Made by a program: the position numbers and the translations under genes. From Octopus sinensis (Eukaryota): a stretch of DNA of 64,000 bases. Below the pieces are notes generated by a model that was not told where the DNA came from, did not search any database, and was given only the letters and a program-made list of their open reading frames with translations. The stretch is taken from assembly GCF_006345805.1 (NCBI RefSeq), contig NC_043001.1, forward strand, positions 9,982,001 to 10,046,000, given 5' to 3'. Positions 1 through 63,541 of this stretch are shown here, one piece after another (position 1 is the first letter of the stretch; each line of letters begins with the position of its first letter).

Positions 1-2203
1 ATCTATAATTAACTGCATTAGAAAGAAACTGTATAGCATTCTGATTAGTGTTCAAATTTTAATGTAGTAGATTTAGTAGTTTAAATACTAGAACTGCAAA
101 CAATTTATGGTTTATTCCTGATCGGTAGTGTATATACTAGGTGAAATTGAATGTTTGAAATTTGACCTGCAATCGTGTTTTGCGAGTTGATTGATATTTT
201 TCCCCTCTCCCCCCTCCTGTCTCTGATAAATCGATAGGAAAAGAAAACTAGCTAGGAAGAGACTAATGTCATGTCAGAAGAAATGTGCTTGAAGGGATAT
301 TTAGGAATCAGCATAAATTGCTTTAAATAGGAACATCTAAATTTACTTTAAATAACAATTCTACTAAAGTCCTTTAAGGAATTGTTTCTACTTTTATTCC
401 ACTCAGTCTCCATTGTTTCTGTAAAACATATTGGCAATCATATTGCCCCTGCGCTGCACTATACTGCTATACTTACATCTTAAATATTTGATTTCTGTAT
501 AAATGCTAGGTCAGGGTTTAGAAATTGCATTGCTGATGGTGTACTTTGTATGTGTACATAAAGCAGATTAGATCTCACCGTTTTAAAATTTTGGTAATAT
601 TGGTCTATGAAACTACAGGATTTCCTAAATTACATTCTACTTCTTTTTAAAATTTTTTTCATTATTTACCATTCTTTTCTCTTTTTTTTTTTCCTGTTTT
701 ATTATGCTACCAGTTGAATAGAGTTGAAAATCAGATAATTGTATTATTGAATGCAACAAGATGTCTTGACAACAAACTAACAGTCGACTATGTAATAGGA
801 TCTAATTTTAGTCAACTAAGACATTTAATGTGATGTATTTATAGCGTAGAATTAAACCTGTGAGTTCTTGTCGGGGCTGGAAATTGCAATAAACAAACTC
901 TTCTTTGGTTTAATTTCAATCACAAAATAATTTTCTTTTAAATAAACAAAAGCATTGACTATTGAAATATTTCAATGAACACATTCGAAAATATGCAAGA
1001 CTCTACATAACAGATATTGTTTGTTTTTTTTTGTTGTTGTTTTTCTTTCATTCTTTCCTAGGTGTGTTCCACATTTCATTTAACACCTGATATTATAATC
1101 TTGGACTAAATTTTTCTATATCTCTCTCTCTCTCTCCTTGTAAATACACACACATGTAGTCTGAAATATTACTACAATTCCAAACACTGTTCTTCTGTGC
1201 TTCTATTCATCACATAACAACTTCTCTTATCAGTTTAGATTATTTCAGGAAAGATAATTGAAACTTTTGCTGTCACTTGTGTTGCTTGCTATTGATTAAA
1301 TAACAAAGAACTGACTAAATTATTGATCTTTAGTTTAGATTCTTAGGCATTCATTTTCAAGCTCAGATAGATATAAGACTTCTTAGTTACAGTACATAAC
1401 GTCGCACTTCAGCTGCCGATTTGCTTCACTAGTTTTTATTTCAAGACGGCTGGTATATGACTTTGATCATATTTCAAACAGCTTTTGAATTTTTGCCAAC
1501 TTTGATGTTAGGAGGAAAAATCATAGAATTTATTTTAGGTTACTCAGACATAGACATTTAAGTGAGTTTTATGAGGATTATTTGAATTGCTTAACAATCT
1601 GTTGCTAATTATCCATTTGATGATCCCGTGTAATCAGGATGATTTTTGTCAAAATGATGTTTGTTTATTTATTTGATATTTAATTTCCCTCGGTTTTACT
1701 GAATAGTACTTGAAAAAAAAGTTAACTGAATTGTAATAATAGTCAATTATTAAATTATTCCTTTGATTTCTTGAGTACCCCCAAAGATTTATTAGCAATT
1801 ATAGCTAATGAAATTAATAGAGAATAAGTGATCATAGATGTGTACAGAAACAGCGATTAATTTTGATTTCTTTTGAAATGTTTTTAGAACACAAGCAAAT
1901 TTTGATTAACAAAATAATGCTGTAATCCGTTCACAACCTAATTCTTTTGTTGCTGACTGGGATTAAATTAACGAAGAAGGAATATGTTAAGAATATCTTG
2001 GCCATTTTGTCACTTCTGACTTGTGCATTTTACTACGTTACTTCGTCTTCCATAACATTTTAAAACCAAATCTCAACAATTTGTTGTAAGCTCAATATTC
2101 AACACACACACAGTTACATAAATCCACCGACAGATAACAATAACGCACATTTTCTATTAGTCCTCTGACTTAGATTTTTTACTAATGGATTTTTGTATGT
2201 GTG

Positions 2204-2205
<2 letters not shown>

Positions 2206-2234
<29 letters not shown>

Positions 2235-2550
2235 TCACATCCACATCCACACACTCACATACACATCCACACACTCACATACACATCCACACACTCACAT
2301 ACACATCCACCCACTCACATACACATCCACACACTCACATACACATCCACACACTCACATCCACATCCACACACTCACACACACATCCACACACTCACAT
2401 ACACATCCACACACTCACATACTCATCCACACACTCACATCCACATCCACACACACACATACACATCCACACACTCACATGTACATCCACACACTCACAC
2501 GCACACCCACATACACACACACATCCACACCAATATACACACACATCCAT
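2206..2550. repeat. (CA)n followed by a 20-bp minisatellite (unit ACACATCCACACACTCACAT, about 14 copies)
   Basis: 20-bp periodicity is directly visible from about 2241 to 2510. It explains the His/Thr-rich ORFs in all three + frames. Confidence 0.95.
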
Positions 2551-2792
2551 CCATCGAGGTATCATAAGAATATCTACAAGCATTAAGTTACCAATTAACT
2601 TTTGAACACATTCTGTGTATTGGATTGTATTATCCCTGATTTCTGAATCTGTAGCATCAGAATCAAATGTTTTTCAATTTACTGTCACATATAATGTATG
2701 TGTGTAATTATGTGATAATGTGTGTGAATAATAAAAAATAAATAAAATATATTTAAATGTTTTATTTATAACTTTTACATTTTATTTTCCAG

Positions 2793-2850: not shown

Positions 2851-3130
2851 GTAATGCAAATTTTAATTTTACTGAACATTTTTTTTTTTCTCCTTAAATT
2901 TCGCTTGTTCTGCTTTTATACCAGTGCCAATAGTATTAGGTCATGTTCAGCATCCATTACTATATGAACTGAACATCAGCAAAGAATTTGTTTTGGTTTT
3001 GGGGAAAATCTATCCAGTTCTTCCTCTTCAAAATTTTTGTATTCTCACATATTTTCCTACTTTCATGGGCTAGCTTTAAACCCTTGTTTTAGTTTATGGG
3101 GAAGGGTCGTTTTGAGACCTTTTACCATAC

Positions 3131-5141: not shown

Positions 5142-7340
5142 TCAAAATGTGATGCTCAAAATGTCTGGTAGTGTCGGCTATAGCCTAGTCACCCGTATAG
5201 TTAATCAGGTGATACACAAAGGGGTCATACCCAATGACTGGTGTAGCAGTATAATAGTCAACTGCTACAAAGGTAAAGGTGATGCCCTAGATACAAATAA
5301 CTACAGAGGTATCAAGCTGTTGGACCAGGTGATGAAGGTTACGGAGAGGGTCATAGCCCAACTAATTAGAGAGAGAGTTAGTTTAGATGAGATGCAGTTT
5401 GGGTTTGTGCCAGGGAAAAGTACTACTGATGCTATATTCCTGGTAAGGCAGCTGCAGGAGAAATACCTAGCCAAAGATAAGCCCCTGTACCTGGCTTTTG
5501 TTGACATGGAGAAAGCCTTCGACAGGGTCCCCCGATCCCTTATCTGGTGGGCAATGAGGAAACTAGGGATAGATGAATGGTTAGTGAGAGCTGTGCGGGC
5601 CATGTACAGGGACGCCGCTAGTAGGGTGAGGGTTGGAAATGTGTACAGTGAAGAATTCCGGGTAGAGGTAGGGGTCCACCAAGGCTCAGTACTCAGCCCC
5701 CTCCTATTTATCATAGTCCTCCAGGCAATAACGGAGGAATTCAAGACAGGATGCCCTTGGGAGCTCCTCTATGCTGATTACCTTGCTCTAATTGCTGAGT
5801 CGCTATCAGAACTGGAGGAGAAGTTTCAGGTGTGGAAACAAGGATTAGAATCGACGGGCCTCAGAGTCAATCTAGCTAAAACCAAAGTCGTAATCAGTAG
5901 GAAGGTAGACAAATCACAAACACCTTCAGGTAGATGGCTCTGCTCGATCTGTAGAAAAGGTGTAGGTAGAAACTCTATAAGATGCACCAAGTGTAAGCTA
6001 TGGACACATAAGAGATGCAGCAATGTCAAAGGAAGGCTAACTAGGAAGATGGTTTTTGTATGTGGCAGATGCTCAGGAACAATAAACACTGAAAATGCTC
6101 TGAGACCAACTTCCGTCACTTTCCAGGGAGAAAAACTAGAAATAGTTGATAGTTTCCGTTACCTAGGTGACCAAGTCAGCAGCGGGGGCGGGTGTGCTGA
6201 AAGTGTAACTGCTAGAGTAAGAATAGCTTGGGCAAAGTTCAGAGAGCTCTTACCTCTACTGGTGACAAAAGGCCTCTCGCACAGAGTGAAAGGCAGACTG
6301 TATGATGCGTGTGTACGAACAGCCATGCTACATGGCAGTGAAACATGGGCCGTGACTGCTGAGGATATGCGTAAGCTCGCTAGAAATGAAGCCAGTATGC
6401 TCCGATGGATGTGTAATGCCGGTACTCACACTCGGCAGAGTGTAAGTACCTTGAGAGAAAAGCTGGACCTAAGAAGCATCAGTTGTGGTGTGCAAGAGAG
6501 ATGTTTGCGCTGGTATGGTCATGTGGCGAGAATGGATGAAGATAGTTGTGTGAAAAAGTGCCACACCCTAGCGGTTGAGGGAACCTGTGGAAGAGGCAGA
6601 CCCAGGAAAACCTGGGACGAGGTGGTGAAGCACGACCTTCGAACTTTAGGTCTCACTGAGGAAATGACTAGAGACCGAGACCTCTGGAAGTGTGCTGTGC
6701 GCGAGAAGACCCGGCAGGACAAGTGAGTCCATAACCCGTGGCCTTCTACATGGGATGGAGCCAGCCTACGTATGCATACCTTCCCTTCTTGGGACACAAA
6801 ACTCTACTTATGAAGACGTGATGAGGCAAGTGAGGATCAGAATCGAAATCGATCAATGGAAATTGCGGATGTGCTACCAGTGCCGGTGGCATGTCAAAAC
6901 TCTGCTTGTGAAGACCCGTTGAGGCAAGTGACGATCAGAATCGAAATCGATCAATGGAAATCGATCAATGGAAATTGCAGATGTGTTACCAGTGCCAGTG
7001 GCATGTAAGAGAACTTTCCGTTTCGCGACCGTTGCCAGCACCGCCCCGTTTCGTGTCCATTGCCAGCCTCGCCTGGCCCTCGTGCCGGTGGCACATAAAA
7101 AAGCACCATCCGTTCGTGGCCGTTTGCCAGCTCTGTCTGGCACCAGTGCGGGTGGCACGTAAAAAGCACCCACTACACTCACGGAGTGGTTGGCATTAGG
7201 AAGGGCATCCAGCCGTAGAAACACTGCCAGATTTGACTGGGCCTGATGAAGCCTTCTGGCTTCACAGACCCCAGTAGAACCGTCCAACCCATGCTAGCAT
7301 GGAAAACGGACGCTAAACGATGATGATGATGATGATGATG
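5142..7340 (+). mobile_element. 5'-truncated RTE-clade LINE with 3' UTR and (GAT)n tail
   Basis: RT ORF, about 600-bp 3' UTR, (GAT)n tail at 7319-7340. Candidate 8-bp TSD ATGTGAGC at 5134-5141 and 7338-7345. Confidence 0.92.
5149..6726 (+). CDS. RTE-type reverse transcriptase (endonuclease and N-terminus missing; catalytic motif mutated; internal PHD-like finger)
   Basis: Non-LTR RT motifs: YKGKGD..NYRGIKLL, QFGFVPGKSTTDAIF, AFVDMEKAFDRVP, GVHQGSVLSPLLF, YADY (for YADD), FRYLG, LHGSETW, RWYGHVARM, RGRPRKTW. C4-H-C3 finger at 5941-6072. Confidence 0.93.
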   Translation: MMLKMSGSVGYSLVTRIVNQVIHKGVIPNDWCSSIIVNCYKGKGDALDTNNYRGIKLLDQVMKVTERVIAQLIRERVSLDEMQFGFVPGKSTTDAIFLVRQLQEKYLAKDKPLYLAFVDMEKAFDRVPRSLIWWAMRKLGIDEWLVRAVRAMYRDAASRVRVGNVYSEEFRVEVGVHQGSVLSPLLFIIVLQAITEEFKTGCPWELLYADYLALIAESLSELEEKFQVWKQGLESTGLRVNLAKTKVVISRKVDKSQTPSGRWLCSICRKGVGRNSIRCTKCKLWTHKRCSNVKGRLTRKMVFVCGRCSGTINTENALRPTSVTFQGEKLEIVDSFRYLGDQVSSGGGCAESVTARVRIAWAKFRELLPLLVTKGLSHRVKGRLYDACVRTAMLHGSETWAVTAEDMRKLARNEASMLRWMCNAGTHTRQSVSTLREKLDLRSISCGVQERCLRWYGHVARMDEDSCVKKCHTLAVEGTCGRGRPRKTWDEVVKHDLRTLGLTEEMTRDRDLWKCAVREKTRQDK

Positions 7341-15530: not shown

Positions 15531-15981
15531 GATGATAATTTCACTCCACATGAAAGGATTTGCAAACATTCTCACAGATGTCACTGGTTAGCAAAGTCCA
15601 TTTTGAATGGATTAAAGTTATTCCAATCAGGTTCTTGTTTGTATATTTGCAATATGTTTGTCTTTTTAAATTTTGGATATGCATTTACAATCTGTGTTAT
15701 ATAGCTGCATAATTTATACATACATCTAAAGTACAAGTTCCACTAATATGTCGTCATAAGTATATTAACAAAAATTACAACAAATTTCATGACGCTGATT
15801 TCATTATTTTATAGCACTCAGTTTCAAGTTGTTATTGTTCCTTTCTTTATGATTTATTACGTTAGTTACGTAAGGGGAGGAAAACAGGGATAAATGTTGC
15901 TGGGAGTGGAGAAAATATAAATAATATCAAAAAGAGGGTTAAAACCATCAGTATTCCAGCAGAGTACTGACATGCAAAATA

Positions 15982-16547
15982 TTGGGTTGTCTGGAAAGTT
16001 TGTGCCGATTTATAGTAGCTTACTTTTTGACTCATTTTAGAACATGGTTGAGTCCATAAAATAGGATCTGATTACACCTCCATTTAGAGCACAGTTTAAG
16101 CTATCTTTTCGTGGAAGAAGGTTTATGTTCCTATAACCTGTGTTAATTCTGTAACCCTTTAAAATGGAAGATAAGAAAGTTCATTTTTGGCACTTGATGC
16201 TTTGGGAACCAGACAAAAATTGCTGCAGCTCGGCTGGGATGTGTTACCCCACCCTCCATATTCACCAGATATTGCTCCTTCGGATTTCCACTTATTCATG
16301 TCTCTGCAGAATAGTCTTAATGATAAAAATTTCAATTCCTTTGATGATGTAAAAAGATACCTTGATGAATTCTTTGCCATGAAACCACCTCAATTCTGGG
16401 AAGAGGGTATTTTCAAGTTAAAGGAAATATGGAGATGCATTGTGCAACAAAATGGTTCATATTTGGTTGATTAAAAATGTACTGGCAAGTATTTATTGAT
16501 CTTTTTCTTTCCTTTAAAAATTGGCACGAACTTTCCGGACAACCCAA
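15982..16547 (+). mobile_element. Internally deleted mariner transposon
   Basis: About 30-bp TIRs TTGGGTTGTC(T/C)GGAAAGTT, TA at 15980-15981 and 16548-16549, with transposase N- and C-terminal remnants inside. Confidence 0.92.
16164..16474 (+). pseudogene. Mariner transposase remnant (first 15 codons fused out of frame to the C-terminal segment)
   Basis: MEDKKVHFWHLMLWE at 16164-16208, then in another frame TRQKLLQLGWDVLPHPPYSPDIAPSDFHLF...GSYLVD* (YSPDLAP-type motif). Confidence 0.88.
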
Positions 16548-17556
16548 TATTACCACAAATGCTTGCTTGATTAGTATGTTGCCATGGCCATCATGTGGTG
16601 TCTCTTCTAACTGTTGTCCTATTGGCATTGATGATGAACCTCATTAATTCACTGGCAACCCCAGTTATTTCCATTGCCTCTACTTCAAAGACATATGTAC
16701 AGTGCTGTTTAAGGCACATTGGGCAGTTACCCAGGGCCCTCACAAGTCTAAGGGTCCAAATCTGATCTATGTATGATGTGGTTTGCTGTCAAATTCCATA
16801 GGGTCCAGTGAATTGATTTACTCAGAGCCTTGTTATGCTATGAAAACTGCCCTGCATATGTAATGCTGTATTTGCACAAGTTACCATCCTCAGCTTCCAA
16901 TAGGGGGATCAGATCACAAACTCCTGAGATTCTGCTCGAAGTGAATGTCCTGGCCATTAAGCAACTTAAGGCATTTAGAAAACTGATCATCCTGTTTGAA
17001 CATTTGCTGTTAGACTGGTGATTGCTGATATGCTTGCTGATAATAGGGATAGCTTTTTAGATATTTCCCTATATATTTCTACACAGCATGTACTTTGAAT
17101 TTCAAGGGTTCCTGAGAGGTATAGAGCCTTTTAATTGAATGCTTTATTGTTATGATGTGAGATGAAATGAATTAATTTTGTGCTGTTTTAAAATTTGGAT
17201 AAAAAGGTTAATCTTATTCTCTTTGATTCATAATTTTAAAATATATCAACTGAGATGATTTTTGTCTCTTAGATATGACAATTTTGTGAAAGCAGTGTTT
17301 CTAGAAATAACCAGCTGCATTCCATATCATTTTGATCATTGAAATGTAACATTCTTGCTGAGAGATTATCAATACTTTAATTCAAAATGCTTCAGTTATT
17401 TATTTAGCAAAATAATAATTTGTAAAAATTCACATAATATATGTTTATACTTTAATATTCATATTTACTAATCAGAATAATTTGAGCAAAACAGCTTCAG
17501 AGTAAATTTTATTAATAATTAAGTTTAGTTGAAATAAATTGTCAAAGTGCTTTCAG

Positions 17557-23882: not shown

Positions 23883-24215
23883 TCATCATCATCATTATCA
23901 TCGTCATCGTTTAACGTCCATTTTCCATGGGTTGGACGGTTCGACCAGGGTCTGGGAGGTCAGGAGGCTGCACCAGGTTCCAGTCTGATCTGGCAGTGTT
24001 TCTACAGCTGGATGCCCTTCCTAACACCAACCACTCCGTGATTGTAGTGGGTGCTTTTTATGTGCCACAGGAGGCTGGCAAATGGCCACAGTCGGTTGGT
24101 GCTTTTTACGTATCACCGACCTGGACACCAGTCAGGTGGTGCTGGCTTCAGCCACATTCGGATGGTGCTTTTTATATGCCACAGGCATGGGTATCATGAC
24201 TACAATTTCCATTTG
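23883..24215 (-). mobile_element. Family B retroposon
   Basis: (CAT)n tail at the left; extends into the AATGGAAATTG segment also seen in the RTE 3' UTR. Confidence 0.88.
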
Positions 24216-24394
24216 ATTCTTATTTTGATGTGATACGTAATGTTGCTTTTTATCTCTTTCTAGCTGTGTATGCCACTTGCTGTATTTGTTGTGTAGTTGA
24301 AGGTCAGCTGTGTTTGACCAATGCTATAATGTGCAGGTTGTTGACCAATTAACTTGACAAACCTCTGCATCTGCTTTTCCATTTATATCATTAA

Positions 24395-24710
24395 TACCCA
24401 AGCCGGTGGCATGTAAAAAGCACCATCCGAACGTGGCTGATGCCAGCGCCGCCTGACTGGCGTCCATGTTGGTGACATGTAAAAGACACCAACCAATCGT
24501 GGCCGTTTGACAGCCTCCCCTGGCCCCTGTGCTAGTGGCATGTAAAAATCACCCAGTACACTCACGGAGTGGTTGGCGTTAGGAAGGGCATCCAGCTGTA
24601 GAAACATTGCCAGATCAGACTGGGCCTGGTGCAGCCTTCTGGCTTCACAGACCCCGGTCGAACCGTCCAACCCGTGCTAGCATGGAAAACGGACGCTTAA
24701 CGATGATGAT
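24395..24710 (+). mobile_element. Family B retroposon
   Basis: Module repeats, core and GAT tail. Inverted relative to 23883-24215. Confidence 0.9.
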
Positions 24711-25022
24711 CATGATCCTGCTGCTACTTTCCTAGCTGGAGACCTTACTGGATACTCTGAAATCATAGGCTGCAGTTAAGAGACTGGACATATGGCATTC
24801 CCTCTACTTTAGCCTGGTATGGCTCCCGGCCTTACCAGCTCCTGTCAGATCATTTATCACATGCCGACATGAGAAATGGATGTTAAATGGTTATGATATC
24901 TGTGTACCTGGAGATGAATTTACAATGTCTACAGAAGAAGTGGGCATTGTAAACTCCATCAGAACACAGCAGTTGTTGGTTCTTTCTTTGTTAGGGGTTT
25001 GTATCACAATACACTATTTGGG

Positions 25023-33572: not shown

Positions 33573-34381
33573 TCTTCTTCTTCTTAATCCTTTTGACCCC
33601 TTGTGGAGCATAGGGCCTTGACAGTTGTTTTCTACTTTTTGTGTGTATGTATGTATGTATCTTCTACTCTTAATTGGCGTGTTTCTTGGCTGCTTCCCAT
33701 GTCAGGCCACTGATCCTGAGTTCGTCCAAAATGCTCTGCTTCCATGTCTGCTTCGGGCGTCCGCACTTCCTTTTCCCACTGCAGGTTCCAGTCAAGTGTT
33801 TGTTATATCACATTTGAGGGTTCTTCCCGTAGCGTGTGTTCGATCTATCTCCATTTCCTTCGTCTAATCTGAACATGTATGGGCTCCTGGTTGGGCCTTT
33901 CCCACAGGTCGGTGTTTGGCACTCTGTTGAGCCACTTCAGATGGAGGATCTGCCGGAGACATTTGTTGATGAAGGTCTGGATCTTCTTGTAGTTGCTGCA
34001 GGTGGCTCTCCATGTTTCAGAGCCATAAAAAAGCACAGGTATACGTTTGAACTAAATAAGTGGAGTTTAGTTCGAGTTGAGATGGCAGTGGACTTCCATA
34101 CTGGCTGAAGAATAGTGAAGGCTTGCCAAGCCTTCTTGCTTCTTGCCATGATGTCCTCGTTTGATCCACCTGATTTGCTGATCTTGCTGCCAAGATAGAT
34201 AAACTCACTAATATCCCCCACAGGTGCCCCCTCGATTGTGATTGGTTCTTCCTGCTTGTTGTTGATACGTTGCACTTTTGTCTTTTCCTGGCTGATCCTC
34301 AAGCCCACCTGCCGTGAAGTTCCTGTCGGGTGGTCTACCTTATCTTGCATGTCCTGCAGGCAATGTGACAGTACCATGAGG
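33573..34381 (-). mobile_element. Second RTE-clade LINE, 5'-truncated and frameshifted, (AAG)n tail
   Basis: Minus frames give GLRISQEKTKV..EFIYLGSKI..STRTKLHLF and LFYGSETW..KCLRQIL..QIRRRKWR. 10-bp TSD TCATATGATG (33563-33572, 34382-34391). Confidence 0.9.
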
Positions 34382-34439: not shown

Positions 34440-34765
34440 TGTGTAACGTATTGGGCAAGTGTCTTCTGCTATAGTCCTGGGCTGACTAAGGCCTTGTAAG
34501 TGGATTTGGCATATGGAAACTGAAAGAAGCTTGTTGAGGGTGTGTGTGTGTTAGTATTATCTTGTTATGTGATGCATGTAAACAGCTGTCACTGTCACAT
34601 AAGCAGTGTTCTTCATGTCCAGTCTGTTGTGAAAACATTTCTGAACTTAGAGAATTAGTAACCTGTTTGGTAATAGGAAGGACATCTGGCTGTAGAAAAT
34701 CTTTCTCAGCAAATTCCATTTGACTGTATGAGCACGAGAAAGTGGCTGGTAGAACGATGATGATC
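34440..34765 (+). mobile_element. Degraded SINE with a C-type head and B-like 3' end
   Basis: TTGGGCAAGTGTCTTC..GCCTTGTAAGTGGATTTGG, then GGAAGGACATCTGGCTGTAGAAA and a GAT tail. Confidence 0.7.
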
Positions 34766-46391: not shown

Positions 46392-46749
46392 TACAAACAC
46401 TTTCTCTCTCCTTATCCGTATGGAGAAATATGCTCCCACCCATAAATAGAACTAGAGAAGGACAGGGAGTGACATTACACTTTATCAATTGAACAGAATT
46501 AAAATTCACACTTTCTCTCTCTTCATACACATAGAGAAATATGCTGGGAAAGAGAACGTGGGTGGGGGGTCAGTATGGCATCAGGGACACCAAATAGGCA
46601 GTGCCAAAATGGCCCTACCATTGGCTTATATACTCCTCCACCACGACTGACCACACCTATACACACATTACTTCCCACTCTGAAAATTTATTTACACTTC
46701 TTTGCTGCTACTACAATCATCTTTGCTGCTTATTTGAACTTAATTATAT

Positions 46750-46981
46750 ATTTCTTTATTGCCCACAAGGGGCTAAACATAGAGGGGACAAACAAGGACA
46801 GACAAACGGATTAAGTTAATTACAACGACTCCAGTGCGAAACTGGTACTTTATTTATCGACTCCGAAAGGATGAAAGGCAAAGTCGACCTCAGTGGAATT
46901 TGAACTCAGAACATTGTGACAGATGAAATACCGTTAAGCATTTCACCCAACGTGCTAACGATTCTGCCAGCTCGCCGCCTT
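46750..46981 (-). mobile_element. SINE family A
   Basis: 17-bp TSD TTTGAACTTAATTATAT (46733-46749, 46982-46998). Confidence 0.93.
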
Positions 46982-47143: not shown

Positions 47144-47370
47144 GAGGTGGCAGAAACGTTACCATGCTGGATGAAATGCTTAGTGGTATTTTGTCTGTCT
47201 TTATGTTCTGAGTTCAAATTCCACCGAGGTCGACTTTGCCTTTCATCCTTTCGGGGTCAATAAATTAAGTACCAGTTATGCACTGGTGTCGATGTAATCG
47301 ACTTAATACCTATGTCTGTCCTTGTTTGTCCCCTCTATGTTTAGCCCCTTGTGGGTAATAAAGAAATAGG
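47144..47370 (+). mobile_element. SINE family A
   Basis: Near-full-length copy, inverted relative to 46750-46981. Confidence 0.92.
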
Positions 47371-47486
47371 TAAATTAAAAGGGGGAATGAACTAACAACC
47401 AAACTGAAAGATCAAGATAAAACAATATAGCCATGCTGAGGTAGAGTCTGAGAAAATATTTTAGCTATGTCTTTATGATATAGCTC

Positions 47487-50399: not shown

Positions 50400-51959
50400 T
50401 TAATCACTTTACCTAAGTAGCTGAACTTGTCTATGGCATCATGAACAAATGGTTCCTGCAAAAACTCATTGTCTTTTATGTACTCAAAGCATACACTGAA
50501 CGGCCAATATTGAATTCTTACCTATACCCTTTTTACAGAAATAGCACAATGGATTTCTTTATTACAGGAGACTTGTTTTTGTCTGTTGTGTGGGCATGGT
50601 AGTCTTTGTCTTATTCACCAATTTTTCCATTTATTGTGTAATAGCACTGTTACCATCTCCATGTAGAAATGTCCATAGAAATCTGGTCTTAATATCTGCA
50701 TAATTGTGTTAAGAAATATATTGAGAATAGGAAGGCTCGGAAGGAAGATTTTATGGACAGTAGAGTGCTTAATCCCATACTTCTTGGTCTTCCTAATGAA
50801 TTGCGAGCCGTTTACCAAATCTTCAAGTAAGCATTAAAGGCAAAAAAAAATTGTTCACATCTTGAATTTCTGAATTTGTGAATCCTATTTGATTTCTGTC
50901 ATTTTGATAAATTTTATTTTAGTGAAATAAACTGAGAAAATAATGGCAAGCGCTATAGAACAATTAAAATGAGGGCAAAGATGAATAGCATTCACAGGTA
51001 TCATAAAAGTGCCACATGATACTGCCATCAGGTAGACAAATCGAAGGTTAGATCCACAATACTATTTGTCTTTTCATGTCTTGAGATCTGAATATCTAAT
51101 TCAATCAACTTTTTGATGAAAATAAATACAAACACTTGCTTTTTATTTTAATTATATCGTGACCAAATCACTATGGTACTGCAATACTTTTTGTGTACAT
51201 TAATGAAAAATGTTTTATATTTGTGAAATCCTCTCTTGGATTGCTGCCTTTAGTGATGTGTTTCTAGTGAGGTCAGAAGTAAAAACGGATGCTGCTGTGT
51301 GATAATTGATAGCGGTGGCAACATTTTGATAGTGATTTGAACATTTCCGGTGTGTGAAATGTCTGCTTCCCATTACTGGAATAGTTCTACTGTTTCATTA
51401 CAATTAATTACAAACCATTAGTTTAAAGATTCAATTTTTTTTAAATAATTAATTTTCAACTTTATTCACGCATTTTTCTCTTTTATTCTCATTCTTGTGG
51501 TTAAAAGTAATCAAATTCTCAAGACTCAGTTTGTATGTGTGTTGACAGAACAGAAAGAAAACCATTTTATGTGTTTATTCGGTTTTTTGATGGAAATCTT
51601 AATCATTTTTTTTTTCTCTCTCTTCCACATAATGTTTGACATTATCTGATAAGATAATAGCTATTGCTCATCCAGCATGATGCAAATGTAATGAATGCAT
51701 ATGTGGTATTGTGGAGGGGAGAAGGGGAAGAAAAGTGACAAGCAGCTTCTAGTTAAATAATTCCAATGTATAATCTTTGCTGTTACAATTGTGGAATACA
51801 CGGTGTCTTACAATGAGATAGAAATACTGGTATAAAAGAGATAGCTTTATCGAAATTGCTTAATCCTTAAAGTTTTCAACACTTGATGATATAAATCTAA
51901 CTTGTAGATTAAGTTGAGTGTATTCGCTACTAAAAGTGCTGTTCATTTTTTTAAATTTC

Positions 51960-52123
51960 ATGCGCATGTGTGACTGTGTGGTAAGTAGCTTGCTTACGAA
52001 CCACATGGTTTCAGGTTCTGTCCCAGTGCGTGGCACCTTGGGCAAATGTCTTCTGCTATAGCCTCAGGCTAGCCAAAGCCTTGTGAGTGGATTTGGTAGA
52101 TGGAAACTGAAAGAGGCCCATCG

Positions 52124-52155
<32 letters not shown>

Positions 52156-52440
52156 TGTGTGTATATGTGTATGTGTATGCATGTGTGTGTGTGTATATGT
52201 GTATGCGTGTGTGCGTGTATATGTGTATGTGTGTGTGTGTATTTGTATGTTTGTCCCCCCAACATTGCTTGACAACTAGTGCTGGTGTGTCTACATCCCT
52301 GTAACATAGCGGTTCAGCAAAAGAGACTGATAGAATAAGTACTAGCCTTATAAAGAATAAGTCCTGGGTTTCAATTTGCTCAACTACAGGTGGTGCTCCA
52401 GTATGGCTGCAATCAAATGACTGAAACAAGTAAAAGAATA
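51960..52440 (+). mobile_element. SINE family C
   Basis: Full length with an expanded internal microsatellite. Confidence 0.92.
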
Positions 52441-52546
52441 AAAGCTTTGGAAGCAGAGCTATCCTTGATTTACATCTCAAATTACTCTTGTGACTCACTG
52501 CAAGAGAAGTGGGTGGAGAGAAGTATAAAAGTTCTGTATCACTAAC

Positions 52547-52938
52547 AGGCACAGGAGTGGCTGTGTGGTAAGTAGCTTGCTAACCAACCACATGGTTCCG
52601 GGTTCAGTCCCACTGCGTGGCATCTGAACCAAGTGCCTTCTGCTATAGCCCTGGGCCGACCAATGCCTTGTGAGTGGATTTGGTAGACAGAAACTGAAAG
52701 AAGCCTGTTGTATATATGTATATATATATATATGTATGTGTGTGTATGTGTGTGTGTCTGTGTTTGTCCCCCTAGCATTGCTTGACAACCGATGCTGGTG
52801 TGTTTACGTCCCCATCACTTAGCGGTTCGGCAAAAGAGACCGATAGAATAAGTACCGGGGTTGATTTGATCGACTAAAGGCGGTGCTCCAGCATGGCCGC
52901 AGTCAAATGACTGAAACAAGTAAAAGAGTGAAAAGAGA
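52547..52938 (+). mobile_element. SINE family C
   Basis: Full length, tandem with the previous copy. Confidence 0.92.
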
Positions 52939-53047
52939 GTATTGAACATTCTCACACAAAATTGAATTCATAATAGATTTATTTTCTTTTAACTCTTGTA
53001 ACAATCATCCATCTGAGAGCTGGCCATATTAAAGTGCTTGTATATAA

Positions 53048-54553
53048 ATTAGAATCTCTATGAAAACCTCTGCACACTATAAATAATATCACAATATTCA
53101 ATTAATACAAGTATTACATACTAATACACATTAAGCCTATGAAAGGGCCTTTCTGTAATTACCAAACCTGTTACAAATAATCGTCAAATATACCTCACAA
53201 TAATTCCCTACTATTTTGAATAAAGAAGGAACATTAAATATAGCTTATAACTGGAGTACTTTTGATTATAAGCCTTTCTGATAAAATAATACTGTACTGC
53301 ATGTGCACAGCTATTGGTTCAGCTACAACTGTATGGTTAAGAAATTTGGGCGAACTTCATGTCATCTACTATAGGCCTGGATTTGGTAGACAGAAGCTGA
53401 AAAAAGCCTCTTGTGTGTGTGTGTTGTCTTCTTGTTTGATGACACATAATGGTAAATGAGCATTGCTGTCATACAAGTACTGTTTCCAATCTTCTGTGAA
53501 AGCATTCTGGCTATGGGAAATATTAGCTTACTTGGAAAGAGATGACAACCATGATAGGAAGGGTATCTAGCTGTGTACTCCTTCACCAAACTCCATTTGG
53601 TACATGCAAGCAAGGAGAATTGAGCACTTAAACGACGATGGTTATTATTACATTGAATATTAATGGAAAAACAGACAGTTTATTTATTAAACAGTCATGC
53701 AAGTGAAAACCTATAACAATGATATTCCCAAGTCATAGACACAATATCTAGTTTGGATATATACAAGAAATTCAATCTAAAATTTTGTTGCACTAAATTT
53801 TTAAAATTGTTAGGAAAGGCACAAAGATCACAATTTCCCATTCTTTAAAATAAATTCAGTTTAAATTACTTTTTGGCAAGTTTTTAAAAAATTTTTTATG
53901 GTATTTTCATTTGACCTGTGCAAATTTAGATAAAATATAGAATTATGAGATAGCTGTATATTTAGAAGTAAATTTAATTATTGACAAATTGGCAATTAGG
54001 TTAATCCTTATTCTGTAAAACTGATTAATTTAAATAACATTTAATTTTAATTATCTGATTCTATCTGTGGTAATTTCAGAAATTTAGACCTCAATACATA
54101 AACCCTTGATGCTCTGCTATCAGTAATTAAACTCTTAGAGATAGAGATAATTTTCATAAATATAAGATTTGGTTTTTATCACTTTCTCTTAACTGAAGCA
54201 TTTTCAAATCCTATAAATCCTTATATTTTTATTGTAAAATGATCAATAGTGATCAATAGTTAACATCATCTATATTTCAAAATACCTTGGTTATTATTAC
54301 CTATGATATATCTTGTATCTTTGTATCTGAGTGCAGGCATACACAAAGTACAAAATGCAAACGTAATGCCTTGATGTTTATTCACCATAGTAGGGAATTA
54401 TTGTGAGGGATATTTGATGATTATTTGTAACAGGTTTGGTAATTACAGAAAGGCCCTTTCATAGGCTTAATGTGTATTAGTATGTAATACTTGTATTAAT
54501 TGAATATTGTGATATTATTTATAGTGTGCAGAGGTTTTAATAGAGATTCTAAT
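53048..54553. repeat. 167-bp inverted duplication (arms 53048-53214 and 54387-54553, 3 mismatches, 1172-bp spacer)
   Basis: Base-by-base comparison of the left arm with the reverse complement of the right arm. Confidence 0.95.
53375..53640 (+). mobile_element. Degraded C/B-type SINE inside the inverted-duplication spacer
   Basis: TGGATTTGGTAGACAGAAGCTGAAAAAAGCC..AGGAAGGGTATCTAGCTGT..AAACGACGATG. Confidence 0.65.
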
Positions 54554-56802
54554 ATGCAGTCCCTCCAAAAAATGATAGTTTAAACAATGGTTTAAATTTA
54601 TAAATTAATTAAACTAAATGAAAACCATGCTGTACAGAACATTAAAAAAAAATACAGTTTTCCAATTTAGCAGCCCAGATATCTACAATACAGTTTGCAT
54701 TGGTTATAAAGGCCTCCTACTACATTCCTTAAGTGATCCATATGTTTTTAAAAGGCTGTCAATTTCATGCAGTTGTTCATTATGCATTTAGAACGCACCA
54801 CTTGAAAATTTTTTGTTTTGCATAATCTTCTTGAAAATGTACAATTCGCAGGTGTTGCCACACAATCTTCCATTAGTTTGTGATGGATATTTGAAAAATA
54901 TCCATTAGTAATAGATTTTATCAAATTATGTTGTTCTGCTTTCAACAGAGCTACTTGTCTTTATGGACCAATATTTTCATTTAGTTGAATGTTTTATCTG
55001 AAAATTGACAGATGTGTGTAGAACACTGGTTTATTGAATGGACTAATGTGGCCAATGTCTAAATGTACAACACTTGATAAACTGTTTGGTGACCTTTTCT
55101 AATTGCATTGCCGTATGTGATGGAAATATTCATTTGGGGACATTTTATGTATTGGAAAGCTCCAAGGCAATAACTACGTGATTTTTTACTATGCAGCTAA
55201 TCTTGAGGCAATGCTAGCATGATGGCTAATGCAAATGAAATTTGAACAATGATAATATGAATGCAAATGAAGGCTGAGGCTCTGACAATGAGTGCAAATG
55301 AAGGTTGAGGTAATGATATGATTGCCAATGCAAATGAAAATAGCTAAACACTTCCTGTAACTAGGAAAGGAAGGGATTAAACAGGTCTTACGGTCAGAAA
55401 TATGGTGTAAAGAAGTCAACACAACTGCTAACACAAAAAAATAGACATTAGCTAATGAGAGAGTCTCTGGGTGTTTGTTCCACCTGCAAGAATTAATAAC
55501 CAAATAGCCAAGCCAGGTGATCTTACAGAAAGAAGAATATATTGAATGATGTACCCTTTGGAATTACCTGTAAAAGCAATACAATGGTTATGGCTGGAAT
55601 ACCTTTCATTATAGGTTTGTGCAATCAGGGGTTAGCTGCAGTTAAACGTCAACAATAACAATAAAGGTAAAAAAAAAAAAAATTAACGGTTATCTATTTG
55701 CTTAACAAGAAACTTACGAACTAATTCTATCCTTCAAGATAATATAACACACTTCTGTGTTTCAAAAATTTCTCTTAAGAATCAGTTTAAATTATTGGCA
55801 AATATCAGTAGAAGTTACTGGATTCAGACAACTGCTAAAGAAGTTTATTACGGATTTATATATAACAGAAAAAGATTTGAAAATGGAGAATCTTGTCATG
55901 ATTAAATGGTTTCTGTTAGAAAGACTATTAAGTCTGCTCCAATATGTTATGCAAATATGTTAGTAGGAGTTATCCAGCTTATTGCAGTATGGAAAATAGA
56001 TGATAAAATAGATGGAAAATAGATGATAAAAAGCTTCAACACAAGAGTAAAACGTTGTTCATTTCTACTAGAGATGTTAATATTCACAATATGATGATTA
56101 TTGGTTTCCCATGAAAAAAAGGAAAATTGAATTCTTATACAATTTGTAATCTTGGAAAACAAGCATTTTTTTTTTGTTTTTTTAATAAAACTAATTTTTT
56201 ACATGAAGTGGTTAAAAATGACCTATAGTCACTGATTCTGTTCAGTTTAGCTCTGCCATTATCAATGATTCACATTGTGAATAAATTCTTCAAAAATCCT
56301 TTCAAAACGTGTGTTTTTATATCATTTAAAATCAATATTATGAAAATTACCTTTATGAAATCTTGCGCTGGGGATAAGTGTGGAACTGACAGCTATCTTT
56401 ATTTTAATGAGTACAGCTGGACTACTAAAAGTTACTGGAAATGTCACTGGAGGTTAACTTCAAGCTGAGCCAAAATAAACAGGTATTGTGTAGTGTTCTC
56501 AAATTCTAGGCTCGATTGATTGCTACCTAGGAAATTATGTCTAAGGAGTTATATGTGCAAAACTAGCATACACATACTTAAATGTCGAATCACATACTTA
56601 TTGGAAGAAAATGAACAAATATTCAAAATTTTATGTAAATAGAATTAGATATGTGTGTGTTTGTTTGTTAAGAGGAGAGATTAGATATTGCTGAATAAAC
56701 ATTGATCTCTTTTGTTTAGATAACAAGCATAAATGTTTTGTTTGATGATTACTTCAAATGTAACTCCTCAACTTTGCTTTACGTTCATTATACTTTATTA
56801 AT

Positions 56803-60360: not shown

Positions 60361-60842
60361 CTAGGTTGGAAGAAAAAGTTTGTGCACCTTGTTCGAATAA
60401 TGATGTGAGAATTCATTCAAAAACAGCAACTATTCTTCAAAATGCAGACCATCATTTTCCACGGCCATCTGCCAATGATCTGCAAGCTCTCAGCTTTGAA
60501 TTGAAGAATTTTTGACAGGCTTCAACTTCATCAAATGACTCAAATTGGTGGCCTTTTCATAAAGTGCTGCATTGATCGGAAGAGACCGTAGTCAGATGGA
60601 GCAACATCTAGACTATAGGCTGGATGTGGCGGAACTTCCACACCATCCAATTCTTCAATCTTGTTGCTGGTCTTTCTGGTGGTATGCGGCTTTGCAATGT
60701 CTTGTTGAAACAAAGTTCGTTTTCGACAAACAAGTCTTGGGTATCCTTCAACCAGTGCATCGTAGACTTGATTAAGTTGCATCATATAAAAAAAAACAAA
60801 ACATTATTTTAACATGGCGCACAAACCTTTTTCCCAGCCTAA
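60361..60842 (-). mobile_element. Second internally deleted mariner (different family)
   Basis: Diverged TIRs (TAGG(T/C)TGG..AAAA..TTTGTGC), TA at 60843-60844. Minus frame reads LFQQDIAKPH..PHPAYSLDVAPSDYGLFRSMQHF. Confidence 0.85.
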
Positions 60843-61376
60843 TATTAACTACTTACAATAGAGATGGTCTCTTTCTGCTGTTCTGATGGAAATGTTTCTG
60901 TTACTTGAGATATGGAGCACACAGATTTCATCAATGATTAAAAAGGAAGAAAAATGTACCGGCTTTTAAAATAAATCCAGAAACAGCAAATGGATCCTTT
61001 GTGTTCAAGGCATAACTATTTAAACCTAGATGATTGCCTCAGTCAGCGGAGTGATCATGACTTATCTACTAACTGACCGTAAATACACTTAATACTGTTT
61101 GCTCCCTCATATTCAGTCTAGTTGCACTAATCATTGTTAGTCTACCTGCTAAGGTCTCAAAGACTATTTGATTGTCTTAGTTCTCAGGATGCAGCATGTC
61201 TGGGGCACCAAGTCATCCACAAACTAGATAGTGTTGCAGTTCTCTTCCCTTTCTTCAAAAGGAGCGTGATGCATGTTCTTGCAGTAACCACTGGGGTTTA
61301 ACTGTGATAGACATTGTGACCAAAATATTCACTGGCATTCACACTATGGAGATTTCAACATGATTTATGTATACTA

Positions 61377-62167
61377 TCTATTTCTTCATTACCCACAAGG
61401 TGCTAAACACAGAGGGGACAGACAAGGACAGGACAAACGGATTAAGTCGAATACATCGACCCCAGTGCGTAACTGGTACTTAATTTATCAACCCCGAAAG
61501 GATGAAAGTTTAAGTCGACCTCGGCGGAATTTGAACTCAGAACATAACGACAGACAAAATACCTATTTCTTTACTACCCACAAGGGGCTAAACACAGAGG
61601 GGACAAACTTGGACAGACAAACAGATTAAGTCGATTATATCGACCCCAGTGCATAACTGGTAATTAATTTATCAACCCCGAAAGGATGAAAGGCAAAGTC
61701 GACCTCGGCGGAATTTGAACTCAGAATGTAGTGGCAGACGAAATACTTATTTCTTTACTACCCACAAGGGGCTAAACACAGAGGGGACAAACAAGGACAG
61801 ACAAACTGATTAAGTTGATTATATTGACCCCAGTGTGTAACTGGTGCTTTATTTATCGACCCCGAAAGGATGAAAGGCAAAGTCGACCTCGGCGGAATTT
61901 GAACTCAGAATGTAGCGGCAGACGAAATACCTATTTCTTTACTACCCACAAGGGGCTAAACACAGAGGGGACAAACAAGGACAGACAAACGGATTAAGTC
62001 GATTATATCGACCCCAGTATGTAACTGGTGCTTTATTTATCGACCCCGAAAGGATGAAAGGCAAATCAACCTCGGCGGATTTTGAACTCAGAACGTAACA
62101 GCAGACAAAATACGGCTATGCATTTCGCCCGGAGTGCTAAAGTTTCTGCCAGCTCACCGCCTTAATA
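61377..62167 (-). mobile_element. Tandem tetramer of SINE family A
   Basis: Units start at 61379, 61564, 61748 and 61932 (184-185 bp period). One 17-bp TSD ATGATTTATGTATACTA (61360-61376, 62168-62184). Confidence 0.95.
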
Positions 62168-62674: not shown

Positions 62675-63078
62675 CAAGGCGGCGAACTGGCAAAAATGTT
62701 AGCACGCCGGGCGAAATGCTTAGCGTTATTTTGTCTGCTGTTATGTTCTGAGTTCAAATTCTGCCAAGGTCGACTTTGCCTTTCATCCATTCGGGGACAA
62801 TTAAATAAGTACCAGTTGCGCACTGGGGTCAATATAATCGACTTAAACCTTTTGTCTGTCCTTGTTTGTCCTCTCTGTGTTTAGCCCCTTGTGGGTAGTA
62901 AAGAAATAGGTATTTTGCCTGCGTTCAAATTCCGCCGAGGTCGACTTTGCTTTTCATCCTTTCGGGGTCGATAAATTAAGTACCAGTTACACACTGAGGT
63001 TGATATAATCGACTTAATCCATTTGTCTATCCTTGTTTGTCTCCTCTGTGTTTAGCCTCTTGTGGGTAGTAAAGAAAA
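62675..63078 (+). mobile_element. Tandem dimer of SINE family A
   Basis: Full unit, then a head-less unit after GAAATAGG|TATTT. TSD AGATG(A/T)ACCTTATTT (62660, 63079). Confidence 0.92.
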
Positions 63079-63541
63079 AGATGTACCTTATTTTGCAATT
63101 ACTTATGCTAGTTCCTAATTTTAAAGGAATCCATTCTATATTTAATATCTTAACTGAAGTGAAAAGCTCTGGAAATAGTTTTTTTAGCTTTAGCTCTATT
63201 TATCAAACTGAAACAAAAGTATGTGAATCAGATTAAATTAATAAGGAAGAGGAAAGTGATGACAGGAATAGGAGTAACTCGTTTACCCTGATGAATGCTT
63301 TATCTCTTTCAATTATCATTTTTAAGTGTTTAGCATTGCTGGTTTAGTGAATCATCATTAAGAACCTAGAGTGTAAAATTTTGTATTTCTTAGAACAAAA
63401 ATTCACTCAATGTATTGGCTGTTGCTATTCCTTATTTCTTCACAACATGTGTTATTTCATAATTATGAAGAGGATTCGCACCAGCAACTGCTGTTATCTT
63501 TATTTTGGCTGAAAAATCAATCATGCATACACTTGAAGATA

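What the first reader, a model, noticed from the sequence alone, without database searches (positions are those of the whole stretch)
53048..54553. Near-perfect 167-bp inverted duplication of non-repeat-looking DNA around a 1.17-kb spacer
Seen: 53048-53214 equals the reverse complement of 54387-54553 except for 3 substitutions, with no indels. The arms match none of the repeat families in this window, encode nothing evident, and have no TSD outside them. Options (inference): (a) a young fold-back or long-TIR element carrying host DNA, including an old SINE at 53375-53640; (b) a replication template-switch inverted duplication, possibly with inversion of the spacer; (c) a selected long-range RNA duplex for ADAR editing, siRNA production or back-splicing; (d) a mis-assembly. 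It is the most identical large repeat pair in the window.
Basis: partly seen in the sequence, partly recalled or inferred. Interest (0 to 1): 0.7.

Follow-up and report, generated by a model that had tools for sequence, protein, structure and literature searches.

The report
Young 177-bp inverted duplication pair
Two nearly identical 177-base copies of ordinary non-coding animal DNA face each other across 1.15 kb; this is most likely the scar of a small recent chromosome rearrangement (less likely a rare transposon), and nothing suggests it has a function.

Summary
53048-53214 is the reverse complement of 54387-54553 with 3 substitutions and no indels. The match extends to 177 bp (53048-53224 / 54377-54553, 97.2%) and stops sharply at all four edges.

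It is the most identical repeat pair in the window; the next best is 92%. The arms have no other copy in the 64 kb. They have stops in all six frames and no Pfam or Rfam match. They contain no sub-repeats, and no credible target-site duplication flanks them.

The spacer is old AT-rich host DNA carrying a decayed SINE, so the duplication is much younger than its surroundings.

Best reading (about 0.5): a local break-repair or replication rearrangement of host DNA. I favour a ~1.3-kb micro-inversion made by one staggered and one blunt break, with fill-in and end joining. That mechanism leaves inverted duplicates of unique DNA of this size and no target-site duplication. A template-switch insertion is the variant.

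Main rival (about 0.28): a low-copy, non-autonomous long-TIR DNA transposon, allowed only if a 2-bp TA is accepted as the target duplication.

A selected RNA duplex, a mis-assembly and two independent insertions are all unsupported.

The finding is ordinary and of low interest.

The parts
53048..53224 (+). Left arm of the inverted duplication. It is 177 bp and 27.7% G+C; the near-perfect core is 53048-53214.
   Evidence: Searches show 97.2% complementarity to 54377-54553 with no indels. One search finds no internal direct or inverted sub-repeats above shuffled controls. One search shows stops in all frames.
54377..54553 (-). Right arm, the reverse complement of the left arm. The near-perfect core is 54387-54553.
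   Evidence: (nhmmer) finds only these two copies in the window.
53225..54376 (.). Spacer of 1152 bp: AT-rich (29.9% G+C) non-coding host DNA. Under the favoured model this segment was inverted.
   Evidence: One search finds no Pfam hit in six frames. Searches find no in-window homology except the SINE part. One search finds no sequence complementary to the arm ends. One search shows base skews do not reveal its orientation.
53315..53650 (+). Decayed SINE of an older subfamily inside the spacer.
   Evidence: One search gives a weak gapped alignment to the consensus of the young SINE copies. Searches show E = 7e-14 and mean column identity of 76% to the copy at 34451-34764. It is far more diverged than the arms are from each other.
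53215..53224 (+). Inner edge of the left arm: a TT/GG dinucleotide mismatch followed by 8 matching bases (TGAATAAA), mirrored at 54377-54386. It is either a later tandem substitution or a junction signature of microhomology plus mis-synthesis.
Evidence: Eight consecutive matches are not expected by chance in this composition (roughly 0.28^8).
53040..53047 (+). Outer left flank (GTATATAA). Its counterpart is 54554-54561 (ATGCAGTC). There is no target-site duplication.
   Evidence: The only possibilities are a 2-bp TA (if the repeat proper starts at GAATCTC, 53052) or a 2-bp AT (if it starts at TAG, 53050). Both are self-complementary dinucleotides that cannot be told apart from arm sequence.

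Best explanation
This is a recent local rearrangement of ordinary, non-coding host DNA, not a mobile element and not a gene. A 177-bp stretch of unique sequence was copied once, in reverse orientation, 1.15 kb away. I favour a micro-inversion of about 1.3 kb as the route. One break was staggered by 177 nt and the other was blunt. The overhang was filled in and the segment was re-joined in reverse by non-homologous end joining. That leaves the staggered stretch at both ends of the inverted segment as an inverted duplication, with no target-site duplication and no need for junction microhomology. The mechanistic variant is a replication template switch or fold-back-primed synthesis that inserted a reverse-complement copy near its donor without inverting the spacer. 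About 2-3% divergence has accumulated between the arms since the event. The structure is most likely neutral. Its consequences would be passive. A transcript of either strand would form a ~172-bp duplex. The arms could also flip the spacer by homologous recombination or homogenise each other by gene conversion. SHOWN: the anatomy, the uniqueness of the arms in the window, the absence of coding, RNA-family or TE hallmarks, and a young age relative to the surrounding repeats. INFERRED: the mechanism, which arm is the original, and whether the spacer is inverted.
For: The arms are 177 bp, 97.2% complementary, without indels, and all four edges are sharp. They are unique in 64 kb by blastn word 7 and nhmmer --max, whereas every other inverted pair in the window is made of dispersed-repeat copies at 75-92%. 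No direct repeat of 4 bp or more flanks the unit. The arms lack sub-repeats. The unit and its flanks have no transposase or other Pfam domain in six frames and no Rfam family. The arms show no similarity to the 37-nt TIRs of the mariner-like element at 15978-16551. The spacer holds a decayed SINE (mean column identity 76% to its in-window relative). The young SINE copies are already 5-10% from their consensus. The duplication, at 1.8-2.8% arm divergence, is therefore younger than the DNA it encloses, as expected for a rearrangement of pre-existing sequence. For precedent, 17 of 29 Drosophila inversions are flanked by inverted duplications of non-repetitive sequence of 46 bp-1.9 kb (median 321 bp). 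In 12 of 18 such cases only one breakpoint region is duplicated, which is the anatomy seen here (PMC1885836). Template switching is also documented to create reverse-complement copies and perfect inverted repeats in one step (PMC7954356).
Against: No ancestral or outgroup sequence could be obtained, so neither the inversion of the spacer nor the single-copy ancestral state is shown. Genome-wide copy number of the arm is unknown; a low-copy transposon family would look the same inside 64 kb. The documented staggered-break cases flank large chromosomal inversions, not a 1.3-kb segment. Documented germline short-range template switches are much shorter (median 12 nt, maximum 128 nt) and closer to the donor. 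Base-skew analysis gives no sign of spacer orientation. A palindromic TA sits at both ends, so a Tc1/mariner-type insertion cannot be excluded.
Confidence: 0.5

Rival explanations
1. A low-copy, non-autonomous class II (DNA) transposon of 1506 bp with 177-bp terminal inverted repeats. Its interior is captured or decayed host DNA including an old SINE, and it inserted recently at a TA dinucleotide (Tc1/mariner-like).
For: It has long near-identical terminal inverted repeats with a sharp outer edge and a total size typical of non-autonomous elements. A TA is present at both ends if the repeat proper begins at 53052, in an AT-rich near-palindromic site. The genome is transposon-rich and holds mariner-like remnants. 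A rare family need not have another copy in 64 kb.
Against: No target-site duplication longer than an ambiguous 2 bp was found, although arms that are 97-98% identical should still carry an intact one; this argues against TIR superfamilies that make duplications of 3 bp or more. The arms have no sub-terminal repeats or IR/DR-type structure. They show no similarity to the mariner-like TIRs in the window, which are only 37 nt. There is no transposase remnant, and no other copy or fragment in the window even with nhmmer. The interior is much older than the arm divergence, which requires capture of already-old host DNA.
Confidence: 0.28
2. Two independent insertions, in opposite orientations, of the same ~170-bp dispersed repeat (SINE or MITE).
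For: The arm length is typical of a SINE or MITE. Head-to-head pairs of dispersed repeats are common in this window.
Against: There is no third copy in 64 kb, whereas each common family has 8 or more copies. Neither arm has its own credible flanking duplication, tail or terminal inverted repeats. The single 5-bp match for the left arm is at chance level, and the right arm has none. No tRNA, 7SL or 5S-like Rfam match falls within the arms. Two young copies 1.15 kb apart from a family rare enough to be otherwise absent is improbable.
Confidence: 0.05
3. An assembly artefact: a chimeric or fold-back read, or a mis-join, created a second, inverted copy of one arm.
For: Inverted duplications are a known class of long-read and amplification artefact. 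No read data could be examined.
Against: Fold-back artefacts give palindromes that continue through the whole read, with little or no spacer. Here the homology is confined to 177 bp with sharp edges around a 1152-bp non-palindromic spacer. The arms differ by substitutions only, with no indels, unlike raw long-read error. There are no Ns or gaps in the window.
Confidence: 0.05
4. A selected long-range RNA duplex: a young hairpin-RNA (endo-siRNA) locus, an ADAR substrate or a back-splicing helper. This concerns function and could coexist with any of the origins above.
For: If transcribed on either strand, the arms are predicted to form 172 base pairs, with duplex energy of about -274 kcal/mol and a perfect 120-bp stretch. 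Hairpin-RNA loci in Drosophila are born as young inverted duplications (PMC10317233 and PMC10292708, found).
Against: There is no evidence of transcription. The arms are not homologous to anything else in the window that could be a target. No exon-like or domain-bearing sequence lies in or beside the unit, and no RNA family matches. A pairing prediction is automatic for any inverted repeat. Near-identity is fully explained by youth.
Confidence: 0.05

Closest known systems
Inversion-associated inverted duplications from staggered breaks (Ranz et al. 2007, PLoS Biol, PMC1885836)
   Same: Both involve inverted duplicates of ancestrally unique, non-repetitive sequence at the two ends of a segment. 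The arm size of 177 bp falls inside the reported 46 bp-1.9 kb range. Only one breakpoint region is duplicated, as in 12 of the 18 reported cases. No transposon and no target-site duplication is present at the junctions.
   Different: The reported cases bound chromosomal inversions spanning many genes, whereas the enclosed segment here is only 1.15 kb. Inversion of the spacer is not demonstrated here. The reported duplicates average 88% identity and this pair is 97%, so it is younger.
Replication template switching and fold-back priming (four-point model, PMC5453318 and PMC7954356; MMBIR, PMC2621351)
   Same: A reverse-complement copy of nearby sequence is created in one event, giving a near-perfect inverted repeat. 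An 8-bp match set off by a 2-nt mismatch at the inner edge could be a priming microhomology.
   Different: Germline short-range events are far shorter (median 12 nt, maximum 128 nt) and lie within tens to hundreds of bases of the donor. No microhomology is seen at the outer junction. MMBIR-type events are usually kb-Mb copy-number changes.
Non-autonomous DNA transposons with long terminal inverted repeats (long-TIR Tc1/mariner relatives; foldback-like elements such as FB and Galileo)
   Same: The arms are long and near-identical and bound a non-coding interior of about 1.5 kb in total. TA dinucleotides could be read at both ends.
   Different: There is no unambiguous target-site duplication, no tandem sub-repeats in the arms, no IR/DR binding-site pairs, no family members and no autonomous partner in the window. 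That FB makes 9-bp and Galileo 7-bp duplications is from my own knowledge and was not tested here.
Drosophila hairpin-RNA (hpRNA) endo-siRNA loci (PMC10317233, PMC10292708)
   Same: Both are evolutionarily young inverted duplications able to form a long perfect RNA duplex.
   Different: hpRNA arms are copies of a target gene and are transcribed and diced. No target, transcript or small RNA is known here, and the 1.15-kb loop is large.

Membership tests
TIR (class II) DNA transposon | Terminal inverted repeats at both ends | tested here: met
   The arms are 177 bp, 97.2% complementary, with a sharp outer edge.
TIR (class II) DNA transposon | Target-site duplication of superfamily-specific length directly outside the repeats | tested here: not met
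   A systematic scan of end positions, allowing plus or minus 3 nt of asymmetry, finds no direct repeat of 4 bp or more. The 3-bp matches are fewer than chance expects. Only a self-complementary TA or AT dinucleotide is possible.
TIR (class II) DNA transposon | Multiple dispersed copies sharing the same termini | tested here: inconclusive
   There is no other copy in 64 kb by blastn or nhmmer. Genome-wide copy number could not be tested. An exact 26-mer of the arm is absent from the metagenome and prokaryote collections, which is uninformative for an animal genome.
TIR (class II) DNA transposon | Transposase gene, or termini shared with an autonomous partner | tested here: not met
   Pfam finds nothing in six frames of 52950-54700. 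The arms do not resemble the TIRs of the mariner-like element at 15978-16551.
Foldback (FB-like) element | Long inverted arms built from tandem sub-repeats | tested here: not met
   No internal direct repeats were found in the arm, against 0.42 expected in shuffles.
MITE | Small size (under about 800 bp) and high copy number | tested here: not met
   The unit is 1506 bp and there is no other copy in the window.
DIRS-like retrotransposon | Internal complementary region matching the ends of the inverted terminal repeats; RT and tyrosine recombinase genes | tested here: not met
   The spacer has no match to the arm ends or flanks above shuffled controls. There are no Pfam domains.
Inversion-associated inverted duplication (staggered breaks) | Inverted duplicates of non-repetitive sequence at both ends of a segment, 46 bp-1.9 kb, with no TE or TSD at the junctions | tested here: met
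   The size range is from PMC1885836.
Inversion-associated inverted duplication (staggered breaks) | The enclosed segment is inverted relative to the ancestral or outgroup arrangement, which has a single copy of the arm | not testable with these tools
   No sequence from the source species or its relatives could be retrieved. Skew analysis was uninformative.
Short-range replication template switch (four-point model) | A reverse-complement copy of nearby sequence replaces or is inserted into the ancestral sequence; events span tens of nucleotides within tens to hundreds of bases | tested here: inconclusive
   A reverse-complement copy is present. However, 177 bp at 1.15 kb exceeds the reported scale of median 12 nt and maximum 128 nt.
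hpRNA / endo-siRNA locus | Transcribed inverted repeat diced into siRNAs, with arms homologous to a target gene | not testable with these tools
   Only the pairing potential could be computed: 172 bp and -274 kcal/mol. No homologous target exists in the window. No expression data are available.

The most novel reading that the evidence does not exclude
The inverted duplication is a newborn hairpin-RNA locus. It would be transcribed as part of a long intron or non-coding RNA, and its 172-bp near-perfect duplex would feed Dicer or ADAR. If the host is a coleoid cephalopod, that would be an animal with unusually heavy ADAR activity. I suspect this from memory of the SINE but could not verify it. 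In that case the duplex would be retained or homogenised because of that activity.
Probability: 0.05. Interest if true: 0.6.

Novelty: new member of a known kind. Interest (0 to 1): 0.2.

Why it matters
If the favoured reading is right, this is a clean, young example of how small rearrangements create long perfect inverted repeats from unique DNA in an invertebrate genome. Such repeats are raw material for hairpin RNAs, for recurrent flipping of the enclosed segment and for fragile sites. As a single neutral-looking locus in repeat-rich non-coding DNA, it changes no current view. Its main practical value is as a test case. One genome-wide search and one comparison with a sister genome would separate micro-inversion, template switch and transposon.

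Tried and rejected
1. Retrieving the same locus from other assemblies:
- Exact look-ups of two spacer ORFs found nothing.
- A homology search with the 105-aa open frame of the spacer found no candidate.
- The intact LINE RT ORF of the window has its best relative at only 73% identity.
- The source species and its close relatives therefore appear to be absent from the protein and contig collection, and the comparative route was abandoned.

2. An exact 26-mer of the arm core is absent from metagenome contigs and genome contigs. This is uninformative for an animal genome.

3. A literature search for four SINE fragments, meant to identify the organism, gave 0 papers. My recollection that the SINE is the abundant octopus SINE remains untested.

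4. Rfam gave nothing at gathering thresholds. At E of 1 or less around the locus it gave only two sub-threshold hits, in the microsatellite part of the neighbouring SINE.

5. An IR/DR or sub-repeat structure in the arms was rejected.

6. A DIRS-like internal complementary region was rejected.

7. A-T and G-C skews were tried as a way to detect an inverted spacer. The spacer skew is unremarkable, at the 70th percentile of same-size windows. The arm's strong C over G asymmetry was noted but is too noisy at 177 bp to say which arm is original.

8. A search for extended, decayed homology beyond the arms found none.

I inspected the open frames of 42-64 kb by eye and saw nothing exon-like. Whether the locus is intronic or intergenic remains open.

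Full report
**Observation**

The stretch 53048-53214 is the reverse complement of 54387-54553 over 167 bp. There are three substitutions (53062 G/T, 53183 G/A, 53192 A/C) and no indels. After a TT/GG dinucleotide mismatch at 53215-53216, eight further bases match. The repeat finder and blastn therefore both report 177-bp arms (53048-53224 and 54377-54553) that are 97.2% complementary, with 1152 bp between them and E = 4e-82.

Gapped local alignment of the inner flanks and of the outer flanks finds nothing beyond chance. The homology is a discrete block with four sharp edges. An all-against-all comparison of the window shows it is the most identical repeat pair of 80 bp or more: 97.2%, against 92.0% for the next pair and a median of 83%.

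**Context**

The window is animal DNA with 34.8% G+C, dense in interspersed repeats. It contains:
- at least eight copies of a ~390-bp tRNA-headed SINE with an internal (TA)n(TG)n tract;
- several other short repeat families, often lying head-to-head;
- an intact LINE reverse-transcriptase ORF with RVT_1 and PHD domains;
- a mariner-like remnant with 37-nt TIRs.

No Rfam family reaches its gathering score anywhere in the window. I saw no exon-like open frame near the locus. Two SINEs lie immediately to the left (51959-52443 and 52546-52949). From 52950 to about 58130 the DNA has no in-window homologue except the features described here.

**The arms**

The arms are 27.7% G+C and carry stops in all six frames. 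They have no Pfam match and no Rfam match even at E of 1 or less. They have no internal direct or inverted sub-repeats beyond shuffled expectation. Neither blastn with word size 7 nor nhmmer with filters off finds a third copy in the window; the next nhmmer hit has E = 0.25. They also do not resemble the TIRs of the mariner-like element at 15978-16551.

**The ends**

I scanned all candidate end positions around the outer edges, allowing the two ends to be offset by up to 3 nt. No flanking direct repeat of 4 bp or more turned up. The three 3-bp matches need asymmetric ends and are fewer than chance predicts in this AT-rich sequence.

The only possible target duplications are the self-complementary dinucleotides TA (repeat proper starting at GAATCTC, 53052) or AT (starting at TAG, 53050). 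Neither can be told apart from arm sequence. Treated as separate insertions, neither arm has a credible duplication, tail or terminal repeat of its own.

**The spacer**

The 1152 bp between the arms are AT-rich (29.9% G+C) and non-coding. They contain no sequence complementary to the arm ends or flanks.

Positions of about 53315-53650 are a decayed SINE of an older subfamily. It aligns poorly to the consensus of the young copies. It has mean column identity of 76% to a relative at 34451-34764. The young SINE copies are themselves 5-10% from their consensus and 75-85% identical pairwise.

The arms differ from each other by only 1.8% (core) to 2.8% (177 bp). The duplication is therefore much younger than the DNA it encloses and than the main SINE burst, unless gene conversion between the arms has kept them alike.

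**What it most likely is**

Every TIR transposon superfamily makes a target-site duplication. With arms still 97-98% identical, that duplication should be intact. Its absence, together with the following, argues against a mobile element:
- no sub-repeats;
- no family members;
- no transposase remnant;
- no recognisable termini;
- an interior older than the arms.

The anatomy instead matches what break repair or replication errors do to unique DNA. In the staggered-break model of inversion (PMC1885836), one break with a long overhang is filled in and the segment is re-joined in reverse. The overhang sequence is then left at both ends in inverted orientation.

In Drosophila, 17 of 29 fixed inversions carry such inverted duplications of non-repetitive sequence. 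These are 46 bp to 1.9 kb long with a median of 321 bp, and in 12 of 18 cases only one breakpoint region is duplicated. That description fits this locus except for the small size of the enclosed segment.

The alternative within the same class is a template switch or fold-back-primed synthesis that inserted a reverse-complement copy (PMC7954356 and PMC5453318). The 8-bp match set off by a 2-nt mismatch at the inner edge could be its priming microhomology. Against it, documented germline events are much shorter (median 12 nt, maximum 128 nt) and closer to their donor.

I give the class 'local rearrangement of host DNA' about 0.5, with the micro-inversion route preferred.

**Rivals**

- *Low-copy long-TIR non-autonomous DNA transposon, about 0.28.* This remains possible if the TA is real. 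Such a family need not recur within 64 kb, and the window shows that mariner-type elements have lived in this genome.
- *Two independent insertions of a ~170-bp repeat, about 0.05.* This is unlikely. Common families here have many copies in the window, and neither arm has insertion hallmarks.
- *Assembly artefact, about 0.05.* This is unlikely from the anatomy: a long non-palindromic spacer, homology confined to 177 bp, and substitutions without indels. It is untestable without reads.
- *Selected RNA duplex, about 0.05.* Its only support is the automatic prediction that the arms would pair, at 172 bp and about -274 kcal/mol on either strand. It is compatible with any origin.

**Limits**

I could not obtain any sequence from the source species or its relatives:
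- exact look-ups and a homology search with spacer frames found nothing;
- the window's LINE RT has no relative above 73% identity in the collection;
- the DNA collections available are prokaryotic, viral or metagenomic.

Four things therefore remain untested: genome-wide copy number, the ancestral arrangement, read support and expression. I suspect, from memory of the SINE sequence only, that the organism is a cephalopod. A text search for SINE fragments found no paper.

**Verdict**

The interpretation narrows to a young inverted duplication of unique non-coding DNA. It is most probably a rearrangement scar, possibly a rare transposon. Nothing indicates a function. It is an ordinary member of a known kind of structural variant and of low interest.

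Noticed in passing
5149-6726 (+): An intact 525-aa LINE reverse-transcriptase ORF with RVT_1 and PHD-finger domains. Its best database relative is only 73% identical, and the remaining relatives come from marine invertebrates and marine metagenomes. It may belong to a recently active element.
   Followed up: partly
15978-16551; also 60543-60803 (-): A 574-bp internally deleted mariner-like element with 37-nt TIRs (89%). It encloses an open frame with the HPPYSPDIAPSDFHLF motif, recognised by eye; Pfam gave no hit at E of 0.01 or less. A second transposase-like fragment lies near 60.6 kb.
   Followed up: partly
61375-62113 and 62676-63080; 46740-46973 / 47144-47378; copies near 3127, 4544, 19750, 38737: A ~185-230-bp repeat family occurs as a short tandem array, as inverted neighbours and as a head-to-head pair with a 170-bp spacer (87%). 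These are dispersed-repeat copies, unlike the unique arms of the finding.
   Followed up: partly
23894-24194 / 24394-24716: A head-to-head pair (80%) of another ~300-bp dispersed repeat that has many copies in the window (7.1 kb, 10.7 kb, 13.7 kb, 32 kb, 38.2 kb, 58.2 kb).
   Followed up: no
51959-52443 and 52546-52949: Two copies of the main SINE in the same orientation lie directly left of the inverted duplication. Each has an internal (TA)n(TG)n microsatellite of different length.
   Followed up: no
33940-34377 (-): An open frame resembling the C-terminal part of a retrotransposon polyprotein; it hits Pfam DUF6451 at E = 7e-11.
   Followed up: no
2185-2605 (+): An imperfect AC/CAT-rich repeat gives three overlapping 'His-Thr' open frames of 124-134 aa. 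These are an artefact of low complexity, not a gene.
   Followed up: no
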